From NCBI GenBank assembly GCA_024704765.1, contig JAKMXF010000011.1:851557-915556 (forward strand): a stretch of 64,000 nucleotides of DNA, in the 5' to 3' direction. Position 1 is the first letter of the stretch; each line of letters starts with the position of its first letter. The DNA comes from Oopsacas minuta (Eukaryota > Animalia > Porifera). Shown one piece after another: positions 22,535 through 27,631 of this stretch. The notes below the pieces were generated by a model. It had not been told where the DNA came from, made no database searches, and saw only the letters and a program-made list of their open reading frames with translations. The position numbers and the translations under genes were made by a program.

Positions 22535-23101
22535 CTATGTGTGTGATTCCTTGCAAACTTTACCTCTATGTTTCACCCAGGATAAATACATACTCCAAAC
22601 GAGAGATACAACTTCACTGTATATAACGCGTAGTGAGAAGGGTATAAACTTAAAATTAATGAACTGTAAAATCGGCCATACTAAATAGCTTACTGTTAGC
22701 ACTTCCCAAAACTTCTCTTTTACCTCGCGAATACCGTCTTTATAACCTTTACCATCAATTATATTATAAACAATAAAAAAACAAACTATTTCGAATGCTG
22801 AATATATAAATTGATCCAAAATAACTTTGATAATTACGTGTTTGTTTGTTGCTCCAGGGAAACCTCTTTCAAGTAGATAATACCAAACTTGATCAGTACA
22901 ACCACCAAATAGGCCCGTAGCAGCAAATGTAATTGTCCTATGATAATTGTATGGGACCGGGTTTCTTTCGATAATTTTCTGTTCAAGAAAATCGGCTAAT
23001 GAATCCAAAACGACACTACTGGTCCCATTGAATATAAGGAGGGGAATGAATTTGGGCTCTTTGAAAAATACATGTATTTTCCTAAAAGTTATTCTAAACA
23101 T
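22535..23101 (-). CDS. MPV17L2: Mpv17/PMP22 family protein, MPV17L2-like
   Basis: WYYLLERGFP, KVILDQ, EVKEKFWEV, VWPILQFINFKFIP...RV and WSMYLS. Confidence 0.8.
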   Translation of the reverse strand: MFRITFRKIHVFFKEPKFIPLLIFNGTSSVVLDSLADFLEQKIIERNPVPYNYHRTITFAATGLFGGCTDQVWYYLLERGFPGATNKHVIIKVILDQFIYSAFEIVCFFIVYNIIDGKGYKDGIREVKEKFWEVLTVSYLVWPILQFINFKFIPFSLRVIYSEVVSLVWSMYLSWVKHRGKVCKESHT

Positions 23102-24202: not shown

Positions 24203-26785
24203 TTAACTGGCTGGGAATTTTGATTTAAATAATCTTAAATCGTGATGACAATCTGTGATCATCTTCAAAATATCTCTTGGTAAGGATTTAGCATCTATAT
24301 CATTAATAATAGTTTCTAGTCGTTGGTAAACGTGATATAGCGTGGCGAGAAAATTCGCGAATTGCTCCTTCAGGGCTTTATTCGTTGGCTCATTGCCTAT
24401 AAGTCTAACCCGAAATCTCTTAATAATGAGTTGAATTACATGATATGATGTTTCTAATTGATAATTCGGGGATTTAATATTAATCCAATCCAGTAGAGAG
24501 TCTAGGAGAGTTTGGCTTGTCTTTATAGTCCAATTGAACTCTTTAGTTAGAAATAATTTTATTATATGTGAATAGAATTGAGGATCAGATTTAGACAATT
24601 GGGTAGGATGGCTGCTTAACACGTCTAGTGCTTGTTGACTCTTTCCTGAAGACCAAAACGGGAGAATTTTACTATAAATAGCCAATCTTTGTGTTAGACT
24701 AGGATAAATGTGATCGTGTCCTTTTAGAATATTTCGAAAATCTATTTCATCTTCAGTAGCATTTTCTATCAGAATTTGGAATTCTATTGGTTGGGAAGAT
24801 AAATCTAATTTTGTGGATTTATTTGATACAGTTGACTGTAGAGATAATTGTGGATTAATGCCAAAACCATTCGACATTTCTACATAGGAATTATTTTGAA
24901 CAAAATTAGATTTCAGTGAGTACATTGTGGAATCTGACGTCACAGTAGAATAGGGTGTAGCCTCAGTCACTTCTGAAATGGTTGGGGAGCGCCTGGATAC
25001 GTATCCGTTTGTTTGGAATGTATCAATATCTTGATGAAAATAGTTTATATCTGAATCTAATATGTCGTCATTTTCTTTCGCTACATCAAGTAATGGGATT
25101 TGACCATTCGTTTCTATGCCGTTATCCTGAATATTACTCACTTTAAGAGTCTCATCTTTTACTTTAGTTTTCTTCATAATAGCTTGCTGCATACATGGTG
25201 GAATATATTCTATGTCATCAAACTTAACGCGGTTTTTAACACGAGCAGTTTTACTCGAAGCTTCTATCCGTTTGAGTATATAATTAGTTCGAATCGTTTG
25301 TTGGGTGTTCTGCTGTTTAAATGGTATAGGCTGTGGTTCTAGATAAGGATTATACGAGTATAGAGCGTAGTCTTCTTCTAAGTCTGGTAACTTCTTGTAA
25401 GCGTATTTAACTGTGTTTGATTTAGTTGAGAATTCAGCATCGAATAATACTGGTGTTTCGTCAATAAATGGACTAACGGTTAAGCTATCTTCTTCTGGAG
25501 ATGATACACTTTTTTGGGAGGTTTGAGTTTGTTTTAGAATGTTCAAAAGTTTGTGAGTGTAGCTATCTATTAGTCTAGAGTTTGAAAAATTCGTTGATAT
25601 AAACACGTTTGATATATACCCATTGTTGTGTATTTCAAGTAAGCAGCATTTAGATAGGCAAACAAGTGATGTAGGAGGGAATGGATATAGGGAATTAGCA
25701 TTTCTTTGACGGCTGACTACGACAGAAGGTAATTCTCCTAGAGTTGGTATTTCCATTGAGAGAGAATGCCAATTGGTGTGTGATGAAATATCTAAGTATT
25801 CATCCTCATCAATAATATGTGAAACTGTAAAAAACGCGCGCGTATATTCATTAAAATGTGCATGGCCAGGCAGATTATTGTGAAGTACTATCATAGACAC
25901 TTTGTGTGTATTACAACTGAACATTATATCTATTCCTAACGCTTTATAGTTATAGAAGTATGCAGCTGGTCTGTGCAGTGATTTAGTATAGTATTTCGTA
26001 GTAGGAGTACCTAAGTTGGTTAGTACTTCCTGTGACGTACAACTACAGTATATAATGTGTGTTCTATTTCTGAGTGTAAAGTATATGTAGTTGTGTGTTG
26101 AGTTGTATTTGTATACAGGAAAGATTGGTGTGAGATTTCGCGAGGGTTCTAAATGTGTCTGTGTGGAGTACGTGTCAGAGACGATTATGACAGATTTTAG
26201 TTTATATTGTAAGGTATCAACTCGCGGAATTTCGCTCGTTACAGTGCTTAAGGTATCTGTCTGTACGCTTGATAGAGAGTGAAATTCATCGTCTTCATTT
26301 TCATTATAGAAAAGGTACTTTGTTGAGTTTTCATCTTCTCCAAATATTTCCAAAAACTTCATCTGCTTTTCTGATATATCTTGAATTGTAAATCGTTTCT
26401 TCTTAAAGGTTTTCAGAAATTGTGAAAGATTTTCCATAGATTTATATCCATCCTGCTTTTCACCACCTATCCTAATGACGTCACTCTCTTTGCTATATTG
26501 TATCACTAAATTCTGGTCTTTTTCTTGCAAGGAAAGTTTCATAAAATGTAAATTTTGTAAATAAGGCTCAAACGCAAGTAATAGCTCGTAATGACACTCA
26601 AAAATAGTTAAATAAGAGCGTAGCAGTAAATGTTGATGGAAGGGATGAGAATCAGAGTATTCGATGGAAGATGGGTGATTGACCACGCGAAATTCTTTGC
26701 TCAGATTAGTCACATCGCGAAAAGATTGTCCAAGCTTGAATGGACCAATCCCGGTCCCTTGTTGTATCAAAATCTCACTCGACAT
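24203..26785 (-). CDS. PHAF1: Single-exon 860-aa protein: N-terminal PHAF1 (C16orf70/UPF0183) domain, low-complexity linker and C-terminal katanin p80 con80-like domain
   Basis: The N-terminal ~400 aa carry the PHAF1 motifs QEVLTNLGTP, YFYNYKALGIDIMF...THKV...VLHNNLPGHAHFNEY and EIHNNGYISNV. From about aa 678, EDEIDFRNILKGHDHIYPSLTQR...FWSSG...NWTIKTSQTLL...LIIKRF resembles the KATNB1/KATNBL1 con80 domain. Confidence 0.8.
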   Translation of the reverse strand: MSSEILIQQGTGIGPFKLGQSFRDVTNLSKEFRVVNHPSSIEYSDSHPFHQHLLLRSYLTIFECHYELLLAFEPYLQNLHFMKLSLQEKDQNLVIQYSKESDVIRIGGEKQDGYKSMENLSQFLKTFKKKRFTIQDISEKQMKFLEIFGEDENSTKYLFYNENEDDEFHSLSSVQTDTLSTVTSEIPRVDTLQYKLKSVIIVSDTYSTQTHLEPSRNLTPIFPVYKYNSTHNYIYFTLRNRTHIIYCSCTSQEVLTNLGTPTTKYYTKSLHRPAAYFYNYKALGIDIMFSCNTHKVSMIVLHNNLPGHAHFNEYTRAFFTVSHIIDEDEYLDISSHTNWHSLSMEIPTLGELPSVVVSRQRNANSLYPFPPTSLVCLSKCCLLEIHNNGYISNVFISTNFSNSRLIDSYTHKLLNILKQTQTSQKSVSSPEEDSLTVSPFIDETPVLFDAEFSTKSNTVKYAYKKLPDLEEDYALYSYNPYLEPQPIPFKQQNTQQTIRTNYILKRIEASSKTARVKNRVKFDDIEYIPPCMQQAIMKKTKVKDETLKVSNIQDNGIETNGQIPLLDVAKENDDILDSDINYFHQDIDTFQTNGYVSRRSPTISEVTEATPYSTVTSDSTMYSLKSNFVQNNSYVEMSNGFGINPQLSLQSTVSNKSTKLDLSSQPIEFQILIENATEDEIDFRNILKGHDHIYPSLTQRLAIYSKILPFWSSGKSQQALDVLSSHPTQLSKSDPQFYSHIIKLFLTKEFNWTIKTSQTLLDSLLDWINIKSPNYQLETSYHVIQLIIKRFRVRLIGNEPTNKALKEQFANFLATLYHVYQRLETIINDIDAKSLPRDILKMITDCHHDLRLFKSKFPAS

Positions 26786-27220: not shown

Positions 27221-27631
27221 CTAAACCAATACTCCTTGTATAGTTTTCTTCTCGCTTGGTGTATCAATCTCTTTCTCGTCATTTTCACCTTCAACTTTGA
27301 TTTGGTACTCATCTTTATAGGCATTGATTTCTTTGCCCTTCGCAAGTAATTGTTCGTTTAACTTTATTAAAATTAGACCCATTTTGTCGTAATTAACACA
27401 TAAACCTGGCAATACTGATACTACATCTCTCTCCACAAGGACACCACCCACCATTCTAAAACATTTCCGTTCAGGATCTAGCTCCTTCAATGTCTCAATC
27501 ACTAATTTATGTTCATTCTGGTCTACTTCAATTTCACTTATCTTCACTGCAATAGATCGCTGTTCTGAGCGCAACTTTTGGAAATGCTGGACAATTTCTT
27601 CTTTAGACTTTTTAGTCCCTGAGCTTGCCAT
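27221..27631 (-). CDS. PFDN2: Prefoldin subunit 2
   Basis: FQKLRSEQRSIAVKISEIE...EHKLVIETLK...RKCFRMVGGVLVER...GKEINAYK, ending in GVLV. Confidence 0.97.
   Translation of the reverse strand: MASSGTKKSKEEIVQHFQKLRSEQRSIAVKISEIEVDQNEHKLVIETLKELDPERKCFRMVGGVLVERDVVSVLPGLCVNYDKMGLILIKLNEQLLAKGKEINAYKDEYQIKVEGENDEKEIDTPSEKKTIQGVLV

What the first reader, a model, noticed from the sequence alone, without database searches (positions are those of the whole stretch)
24203..26785. PHAF1 fused to a katanin p80 con80-like domain in one intronless ORF
Residues 1 to about 400 are PHAF1, the BCAS3 partner recruited to phagophores. After a ~280-aa S/T/D/E-rich linker, residues ~678-850 (nt 24206-24754) resemble the con80 domain of KATNB1/KATNBL1: I.KGHD...LT.R...W..G...W.I.....LL...Y...LI..RF. 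In katanin, this domain binds the p60 MIT domain and regulates microtubule severing. PHAF1 is normally a single-domain protein and I know of no such architecture. It could tether katanin to autophagic membranes, or be a read-through fusion of adjacent PHAF1 and KATNBL1 genes.
Basis: partly seen in the sequence, partly recalled or inferred. Interest (0 to 1): 0.82.

Follow-up and report, generated by a model that had tools for sequence, protein, structure and literature searches.

The report
Sponge PHAF1 fused to katanin con80
This sponge gene really does join the autophagy factor PHAF1 to a katanin-p80-type "con80" domain in one protein, and the same fusion occurs in demosponges too, hinting at an unstudied link between autophagy membranes and microtubule cutting.

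Summary
Window 24203-26785 (minus strand) is one 860-aa ORF.

- Residues 3-396 are a complete PHAF1 domain (Pfam 92.8 bits; hhalign 99.9%).
- Residues 668-860 are a katanin p80 con80-type domain. The window protein is below Pfam's threshold (18.5-22.5 bits against 27), but its orthologue P0007 passes (36.5 bits).
- A profile of the domain picks mouse p80 (5lb7) as top PDB hit. Two structure aligners rank p80 first (Z 12.3, 162 of 166 residues). ESM Atlas returns con80 clusters.

It is not an assembly or read-through artefact. Six orthologues from separate assemblies keep the ORF, its length and its synteny, and every segment is under purifying selection (dN/dS 0.08-0.38).

The main correction concerns distribution. 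The architecture also occurs in demosponges: the Ephydatia muelleri gene model, a single-ORF relative, and con80 exons downstream of four more long PHAF1 genes. No paper in the library describes it.

The "linker" is only mildly S/T/D/E-rich, and its first 130 residues are the best-conserved part of the protein, with an invariant RVxF-like motif.

Binding of katanin p60 is inferred, not shown. No transcript evidence was obtained.

The parts
24203..26785 (-). Complete 860-aa ORF (stop codon included) encoding the PHAF1-con80 fusion protein
   Evidence: ORF. (six full-length orthologues, 49-67% identity, 858-867 aa). (dN/dS 0.07-0.15 over the whole ORF).
25586..26785 (-). PHAF1 domain, residues 1-400. 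It includes a poorly conserved, probably disordered insert at about residues 125-222.
   Evidence: Pfam PF03676 92.8 bits. hhalign against canonical PHAF1s: probability 99.9%, E 1.2e-31, residues 3-396. BLASTP 31% identity over residues 248-394 to a 419-aa PHAF1.
25196..25585 (-). Conserved middle block, residues 401-530: the best conserved segment, predicted mostly non-globular, made of invariant short motifs
   Evidence: Mean pairwise identity 71%. dN/dS 0.075-0.092. Motif table. No Pfam hit. No relative outside the seven orthologues.
25199..25231 (-). Invariant RV[KT]F-x-D-I-x-Y-I-P motif, residues 519-529: a candidate PP1-docking RVxF motif (inferred only)
   Evidence: It is the only RVxF-pattern match conserved at the same alignment column in all seven orthologues. 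The PP1 reading rests on my own knowledge of the motif class and was not tested.
24785..25195 (-). Variable spacer, residues 531-667: predicted coil, least conserved but still constrained
   Evidence: Mean identity 53%. dN/dS 0.18-0.38. Coil in the low-confidence full-length model.
24206..24784 (-). Katanin p80 con80-type all-helical domain, residues 668-860
   Evidence: Pfam PF13925 at 22.3 bits here and 36.5 bits in orthologue P0007. Profile search puts 5lb7_A p80 top in the PDB, E 2.8e-4. AF2 model pLDDT 70.7. VIA-align top hit 5lb7_A, Z 12.3, 162 of 166 residues. Foldseek top-ranked chains are p80, TM 0.63/0.70 for 5ow5_A. Atlas top 11 hits are con80 clusters, 0.93.
24650..24739 (-). Long N-terminal helix alpha1 of the con80 domain, residues 683-712: the counterpart of the p80 helix that fills the p60-MIT groove
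   Evidence: Helix 16-45 of the model. The stripe F683, I686, H690, I693, L697, R700, Y704, I707, W711 corresponds to mouse M491, I494, H498, M501, L505, R508, L512, V515, W519 (contact list from PMC5668312). P695 and P709 are invariant prolines inside this helix.

Best explanation
The ORF is a genuine, selectively maintained gene, and the sponge form of PHAF1. Its N-terminal PHAF1 domain presumably pairs with BCAS3 on PI3P-rich membranes, as in mammals and Dictyostelium. Its C-terminal con80 domain is homologous to the module by which katanin p80 and KATNBL1 hold the MIT domain of the microtubule-severing ATPase p60. I infer that the protein acts as a katanin 'B-like' adaptor that recruits, or alternatively sequesters, p60-type severing enzyme at PHAF1/BCAS3 membranes such as phagophores or phagosomes. 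The conserved middle block would supply further docking motifs, possibly for PP1. Shown here: the gene is real, both domain homologies hold, and the fusion is conserved across glass sponges and present in demosponges. Inferred: BCAS3 binding, p60 binding, and any effect on microtubules.
For: The gene is real: single ORF; six orthologues in separate assemblies with the same length and Prefoldin-gene-Mpv17 synteny; dN/dS 0.08-0.38 in every segment, spacer included. PHAF1. con80 homology: P0007 passes Pfam's threshold at 36.5 bits, E 6.7e-9; profile search top PDB hit is p80; both fold searches rank p80 first, with full-domain coverage that includes the long alpha1 helix, whereas the look-alike Ge-1 and SPIRAL2 folds align only from model residue 33-34 at Z 8.2-9.3 (criterion from PMC10756542); Atlas. 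p60-facing surface: 7 of 9 hydrophobic contact positions stay hydrophobic or aromatic in at least 6 of 7 orthologues. H498 is an invariant H here (H690); its p60 partner E62 is essential for complex formation. R508, W519 and G522 are also invariant. Recurrence: demosponge PHAF1s end in con80 too, so the pairing has been kept over a long time.
Against: The window protein itself is below Pfam's con80 threshold. Foldseek E-values are weak (0.05-0.14), and the Z margin over unrelated helical repeats is small (12.3 against 11.0). pLDDT of alpha1 is only 50-65. Three polar p60 contacts (R495, H509, R516) are replaced by L/T/M, L/R/Y and L, and A490 is D. Two invariant prolines lie inside alpha1. I could not confirm that this genome encodes a p60 with a MIT domain. 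Published katanin and BCAS3-PHAF1 interactomes do not mention each other (the supplement text held is partial).
Confidence: 0.55

Rival explanations
1. The C-terminal domain descends from con80 but no longer binds katanin p60. It might bind another MIT-domain protein (VPS4, spastin, or an ATG1/ULK-type tandem MIT) or another partner, or it might dimerise. The fusion would then serve autophagy or ESCRT biology without microtubule severing.
For: Half of the polar p60 contacts are lost and two invariant prolines sit in alpha1. The Pfam score is sub-threshold in 6 of 7 orthologues. The same fold in SPIRAL2 and Ge-1 does not bind p60. MIT domains occur in autophagy and ESCRT proteins (PMC5668312).
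Against: The whole a/d stripe that faces p60-MIT keeps its chemical character, with H690, R700 and W711 invariant. The long alpha1 extension that distinguishes p80 from SPIRAL2 and Ge-1 is present.
Confidence: 0.3
2. The protein is mainly a phosphatase-targeting scaffold. The invariant RVxF-type motif in the middle block docks PP1, and the two folded domains merely position it. Katanin, if bound, would be a substrate rather than the point of the fusion.
For: RV[KT]F followed by an invariant D-I-x-Y-I-P is conserved at one column in all seven orthologues. It lies in the most constrained, apparently unstructured block.
Against: The RVxF pattern is short and common by chance. The demosponge tails have no RVxF match after residue 400, so it is not part of the shared architecture. 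No PP1 test was possible.
Confidence: 0.1
3. Artefact: an assembly join, a read-through of two adjacent genes, or a decaying pseudogene.
For: No transcript or peptide evidence was obtained.
Against: Seven independent assemblies carry the same uninterrupted ORF of 858-867 aa with the same aligned start, and the six orthologue loci fetched have the same neighbours. The spacer is under purifying selection with no stop in any species. Demosponges have the same domain order.
Confidence: 0.03

Closest known systems
PHAF1 / C16orf70 / MYTHO / KinkyA (Pfam PF03676), partner of the PROPPIN BCAS3
   Same: The full PHAF1 domain is present at the N-terminus (residues 3-396 align over the whole family profile).
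   Different: Of the PHAF1s scanned here, the two named non-sponge ones (a snake protein of 515 aa and a 419-aa homologue) end at or soon after the domain. This one carries 460 extra residues: a conserved motif block, a spacer and a con80 domain. The PHAF1 domain itself is divergent (92.8 bits against 120-210 bits for other long and canonical PHAF1s).
KATNB1 (katanin p80) C-terminal con80 domain, PDB 5lb7/5nbt/5ow5
   Same: Same fold, including the long alpha1 helix (Z 12.3, 162 of 166 residues). Same signature residues on the p60-facing stripe.
   Different: No WD40 domain and no proline-rich region. Only 12-17% identity. Three polar p60 contacts are lost and two prolines lie in alpha1. Whether the ASPM/CAMSAP pocket is kept was not examined.
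KATNBL1 (katanin B-like 1)
   Same: A con80 domain at the extreme C-terminus after a non-WD40, largely unstructured N-terminal part. It is a precedent for alternative p60 regulators (PMC4858946). A KATNBL1 cluster is among the Atlas look-alikes of the Ephydatia domain.
   Different: From my own knowledge, KATNBL1 is about 300 aa with a nuclear-localisation region and no PHAF1 domain. Orthology could not be tested at this divergence.
Demosponge long PHAF1 (Ephydatia muelleri Em0020g776a, 1312 aa, and relatives)
   Same: Same order: PHAF1, then a long tail, then a C-terminal con80.
   Different: The tails are 700-900 aa and are not detectably similar to the glass-sponge tail. In most demosponge loci con80 is split over several exons, whereas the glass-sponge gene is intronless. 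W519 of p80 appears not to be kept in the demosponge domain (my reading of the alignment).
SPIRAL2 and Ge-1 C-terminal domains (p80-like alpha-solenoid fold)
   Same: Same core helical fold (Z 8.2-9.3).
   Different: They lack the alpha1 N-terminal extension and the p60-contact residues. The sponge domain has both.

Membership tests
PHAF1 (PF03676) | Score above Pfam's curated threshold | tested here: met
   92.8 bits against a cut-off of 27. All 7 orthologues match.
PHAF1 (PF03676) | Homology across the whole domain, not only the conserved C-terminal half | tested here: met
   hhalign probability 99.9%, E 1.2e-31, 356 columns, residues 3-396.
PHAF1 (PF03676) | Forms a complex with BCAS3 | not testable with these tools
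   Known for the human and Dictyostelium proteins (PMC8386740, PMC8032249). No sponge BCAS3 sequence was available here.
Katanin_con80 (PF13925) | Score above Pfam's curated threshold | tested here: inconclusive
   The window protein scores 18.5-22.5 bits, below 27. Orthologue P0007 (52% identical over the domain) scores 36.5 bits, E 6.7e-9, profile positions 1-140 of 160. Four of the 7 match as whole proteins and 5 of the 7 as the domain alone.
Katanin_con80 (PF13925) | p80-CTD fold of seven core helices | tested here: met
   5lb7_A is the top hit of 48,161 chains: Z 12.3, rmsd 3.5, 162 of 166 residues. Foldseek's top chains are p80, TM 0.63/0.70. The model has moderate confidence, pLDDT 70.7.
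Katanin_con80 (PF13925) | Long N-terminal extension of alpha1 (the p60-MIT binding helix), absent from SPIRAL2 and Ge-1 | tested here: met
   The model has a 30-residue helix at 16-45, and p80 aligns from model residue 9, whereas Ge-1 and SPIRAL2 align only from 33-34. pLDDT there is only 50-65.
Katanin_con80 (PF13925) | Conservation of the p60-contact residues | tested here: inconclusive
   7 of 9 hydrophobic contacts are kept in character, and H498, R508, W519 and T506 are kept. R495, H509, R516 and A490 are not. Invariant P695 and P709 lie in the helix.
Katanin_con80 (PF13925) | [quoted passage not shown] | not testable with these tools
   No multimer prediction tool and no p60 sequence from this genome were available.
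KATNB1 (p80 proper) | N-terminal WD40 propeller | tested here: not met
   No WD40 hit. The N-terminus is PHAF1. The protein is therefore not a KATNB1 orthologue.

The most novel reading that the evidence does not exclude
This is a 'Rosetta-stone' fusion. Sponges keep in one polypeptide a partnership that other animals run with separate proteins, namely the BCAS3-PHAF1 PI3P-membrane module and katanin severing. If so, PHAF1/BCAS3 (officially 'microtubule associated cell migration factor') would couple phagophore or phagosome membranes to local microtubule severing in animals generally. KATNBL1 could even be the fission product of such an ancestral gene.
Probability: 0.2. Interest if true: 0.85.

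Novelty: new variant of a known kind. Interest (0 to 1): 0.6.

Why it matters
The molecular job of the PHAF1-BCAS3 complex is still called enigmatic in the papers that defined it (PMC8386740). A domain fusion conserved across two sponge classes is a strong, cheap-to-test hint at a functional partner: the p60 katanin ATPase, or another MIT-domain protein. It would add a third kind of katanin B subunit beside KATNB1 and KATNBL1, one aimed at membranes rather than centrosomes or nuclei. It would also give a concrete hypothesis for the disputed link between BCAS3 and microtubules. On the practical side, public annotation mishandles the gene: NCBI splits the Ephydatia orthologue inside its PHAF1 domain, and ORF-based calls drop the con80 exons.

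Tried and rejected
1. Transcript evidence. Those places were sent to no search tool afterwards.

2. Full-length AF2 model. pLDDT is 37.5, so only the secondary structure is usable.

3. Word-index search for stand-alone relatives (106-338 aa) of the con80 module: none at E <= 0.01.

4. My first conclusion, that the fusion was glass-sponge-only. This was wrong. ORF-called demosponge proteins stop at an intron before con80. Searches corrected it.

5. Homology between the glass-sponge middle block and the demosponge tail block. A similar motif order is visible by eye, but hhalign gives E 0.66, so it is not supported.

6. Direct profile comparison of glass-sponge and demosponge con80 domains. It finds the correct alpha1 register but is not significant (E 0.3). 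The demosponge profile alone finds nothing in the PDB.

7. A canonical SILK motif upstream of RVKF: absent, only Y[IL]LKR is there. An FFAT-like LFDAEF and LIR-type patterns were noted, but they are too degenerate to interpret.

8. Atlas query with whole P0162 for a large two-domain cluster: no usable hit.

9. Katanin proteomics supplements: no C16orf70 or BCAS3 in the text held.
Full report
**1. The observation**

Window 24203-26785 (minus strand) holds one uninterrupted ATG-to-stop ORF of 860 aa. The region is AT-rich (about 34% GC) and unremarkable in composition.

Pfam finds PHAF1 (PF03676) at 92.8 bits. It also finds Katanin_con80 (PF13925) at 18.5 bits for the whole protein, or 22.3-22.5 bits for the C-terminal 183-193 residues alone. 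The curated cut-off is 27.

The neighbours on the same strand are a prefoldin subunit (27221-27631) and an Mpv17/PMP22 protein (22535-23101). Earlier notes of this scan call the genome a glass sponge. I did not verify the taxon.

**2. The gene is real and is one coding unit**

A word-index search found six full-length relatives of 858-867 aa at 49-67% identity. They align end to end, share the same start column, and have 74% mean column identity.

Each comes from a different assembly. In all six the gene sits between Prefoldin_2 and Mpv17_PMP22. XRCC1-like and Dor1/COG-like genes lie upstream in most loci, and adh_short lies downstream in four.

I computed Nei-Gojobori dN/dS on codon alignments for seven pairs:

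| Segment | dN/dS |
|---|---|
| PHAF1 domain | 0.11-0.17 |
| Residues 401-530 | 0.075-0.092 |
| Residues 531-667 | 0.18-0.38 |
| con80 domain | 0.09-0.13 |

The spacer is therefore translated and constrained. That excludes an assembly join, a read-through of two genes and a pseudogene.

I could obtain no transcript evidence. I sent those places to no search tool afterwards.

**3. The N-terminal half is a complete PHAF1 domain**

BLASTP to a canonical 419-aa PHAF1 sees only residues 248-394, at 31% identity. Profile-profile comparison of the seven sponge N-termini with 16 canonical PHAF1s aligns residues 3-396 to the whole family, with probability 99.9% and E 1.2e-31.

The domain is divergent. 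It has a poorly conserved insert at about residues 125-222.

**4. The C-terminal 190 residues are a con80-type domain**

Five lines of evidence agree.

- **Pfam on the orthologues.** The most divergent orthologue, P0007, passes Pfam's threshold at 36.5 bits, E 6.7e-9, over profile positions 1-140 of 160. Four others give sub-threshold hits in the same register.
- **PDB profile search.** An HMM of the seven domains finds mouse katanin p80 (5lb7_A) as its best PDB match, E 2.8e-4, over 112 residues.
- **Structure comparison.** An AF2 model of the domain is all-helical with pLDDT 70.7.
  - VIA-align against 48,161 chains ranks 5lb7_A first: Z 12.3, rmsd 3.5, 162 of 166 residues.
  - Foldseek's best-ranked chains are the p80 chains of 5ow5, 5nbt and 6gzc, with probability up to 1.00 and TM 0.63/0.70 for 5ow5_A. 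Its E-values are weak, at 0.05-0.14.
- **ESM Atlas.** Its feature search returns con80 clusters for the first 11 hits (0.93, 203 of 256 features).
- **The p80-specific helix.**
  - The SPIRAL2 structure paper (PMC10756542) notes that true p80 differs from the look-alike SPIRAL2 and Ge-1 folds. [quoted passage not shown]
  - The model has a 30-residue helix there, and p80 aligns from model residue 9.
  - Ge-1 and SPIRAL2 align only from residue 33-34, at Z 9.3, 9.0 and 8.2.

None of these is decisive alone, because helical repeats give high background Z. Together they establish homology.

**5. Is the p60-binding surface kept?**

Rezabkova et al. (PMC5668312) list the contacts of mouse p80 alpha1 with p60-MIT. 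I mapped them through the ungapped HMM alignment.

The a/d stripe of mouse p80 is M491, I494, H498, M501, L505, R508, L512, V515, W519. In the sponge proteins it corresponds to:

- F683, invariant
- I/L/M at 686
- H690, invariant
- I/L/V at 693
- L/F at 697
- R700, invariant
- Y/S at 704
- I/V at 707
- W711, invariant

H498 accepts the hydrogen bond from p60 E62. Mutating E62 abolishes the complex.

Against this:

- R495, H509 and R516 are replaced by L/T/M, L/R/Y and L.
- A490 is D.
- Two invariant prolines (P695, P709) lie within the helix.

I rate retention of MIT-domain binding as likely, and p60 as the most probable partner. Neither is shown.

**6. The "linker"**

Residues 401-667 contain 33.7% S+T+D+E, against 29.1% in PHAF1 and 25.9% in con80, so the enrichment is mild.

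Residues 401-530 are the best conserved part of the protein. They consist of invariant short motifs:

- LF[DN]x[EF]
- LPDLE[ED]D[YF]ALYSYNPY
- RTNY[IL]LKR
- NRV[KT]FxDIxYIP

The last is the only RVxF-pattern match conserved in all seven orthologues. Reading it as a PP1-docking site rests on my knowledge of that motif class. It is a lead only.

**7. The architecture is not confined to glass sponges**

A full-length profile search of 1.84 billion representatives found only the glass-sponge cluster as a full-length match. All other listed hits matched through PHAF1 alone. Unfiltered HMM searches of those hits with the tail segments found nothing. I first read this as lineage restriction.

Cluster look-up then showed that one long PHAF1 (P0012, 1106 aa) belongs with Ephydatia muelleri proteins. 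One of these is the 1312-aa gene model Em0020g776a (P0158).

- **P0158** has PHAF1 at 14-396 (123.5 bits) and Katanin_con80 at 1140-1251 (20.9 bits, E 4.2e-4). Its C-terminus returns con80 clusters for the first 11 Atlas hits, including a KATNBL1 cluster.
- **Contiguity in Ephydatia** is supported by two overlapping pieces.
  - A single 1078-aa ORF (P0159) covers residues 4-1056.
  - NCBI's model P0172 covers 323-1312 with con80.
  - NCBI's split into G027849 and G027850 falls inside the PHAF1 domain and looks like an annotation error.
- **A second demosponge** (P0162, 62-73% identical) carries both domains, with con80 at 23.2 bits and E 8.3e-5. One uninterrupted 3414-nt ORF encodes it.
- **Four further long PHAF1 ORFs** from other assemblies (L007-L010) have hits to the demosponge con80 HMM downstream.
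  - The hits lie on the same strand and in HMM order.
  - L008, L009 and L010 carry a clear alpha1 signature exon of the form LLE[LV]IS[CS]EH[EQ]EV.
  - L007 has only an HMM hit to that exon, at E 3e-4.
  - Their tails share conserved blocks with Ephydatia.

The glass-sponge tail and con80 are too diverged from the demosponge ones for direct detection. A single ancient origin is therefore the parsimonious reading but is not proven. Whether the fusion exists outside sponges could not be tested with the collections available.

**8. Literature**

No paper in the library holds PHAF1 together with katanin. None combines katanin or KATNBL1 with C16orf70, UPF0183 or MYTHO.

The paper that defined the BCAS3-C16orf70 complex does not mention katanin, and it did not see the reported BCAS3-microtubule association. 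The katanin-family proteomics supplements held as text list neither C16orf70 nor BCAS3.

**9. Verdict**

con80 homology is supported.

The proposed function, a membrane-directed katanin B-like adaptor, is plausible and testable but inferred. I give the mechanism a confidence of about 0.55.

The architecture is undescribed in the papers searched. It is nevertheless old, and already sits unannotated in public sponge gene models. It is a new variant of known kinds, of moderate to high interest.

Noticed in passing
window 25196-25585 (residues 401-530): The segment between the two domains is the most conserved part of the protein. It is built of invariant short motifs, including NRV[KT]FxDIxYIP (RVxF-like), RTNY[IL]LKR, LPDLE[ED]D[YF]ALYSYNPY and LF[DN]x[EF]. 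None has a Pfam match, and none has a relative outside the seven orthologues.
   Followed up: partly
P0157 / P0172 (Ephydatia muelleri EMCRGX_G027849 and G027850) against P0158 and P0159: NCBI's annotation splits the Ephydatia PHAF1-con80 gene into two adjacent 'hypothetical proteins'. The break falls inside the PHAF1 domain (residues ~291/323), although a single ORF spans residues 4-1056.
   Followed up: yes
P0158 residues ~850-940 and the equivalent parts of P0162, P0173-P0175, P0079, P0169, P0014, P0120 and P0050: Demosponge-type long PHAF1 tails share two conserved motif blocks, [FY]xYQP...SR[IL][LM]xLSQD and RLLxHTxSSxxRV[KR]xKYxP. Their function is unknown and they have no detectable counterpart in the glass-sponge tail.
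   Followed up: partly
L011:570-3983: One demosponge scaffold (5.4 kb, labelled as a metagenome) encodes the whole 1137-aa fusion without introns. Members of the same 90% cluster stop at about residue 900, as if at an intron. The scaffold may derive from a processed transcript or a retrocopy.
   Followed up: no
window 22535-23101, 27221-27631 and loci L001-L006: The gene order XRCC1-like, Dor1/COG-like exons, Prefoldin_2, PHAF1-con80, Mpv17/PMP22, adh_short is largely conserved across the seven assemblies despite saturated synonymous divergence. Every locus keeps Prefoldin_2, the gene and Mpv17/PMP22; the outer genes appear only where the fetched flank reaches them.
   Followed up: partly
The tool describes the cause as a filter that also trips by chance.
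   Followed up: no
window 26120-26413 (residues ~125-222): The PHAF1 domain carries a poorly conserved, S/T/D/E-rich (39.7%) insert of about 100 residues between its two conserved halves. It includes a conserved [DE][DET]F[HLR]S[LIV]SS motif.
   Followed up: no
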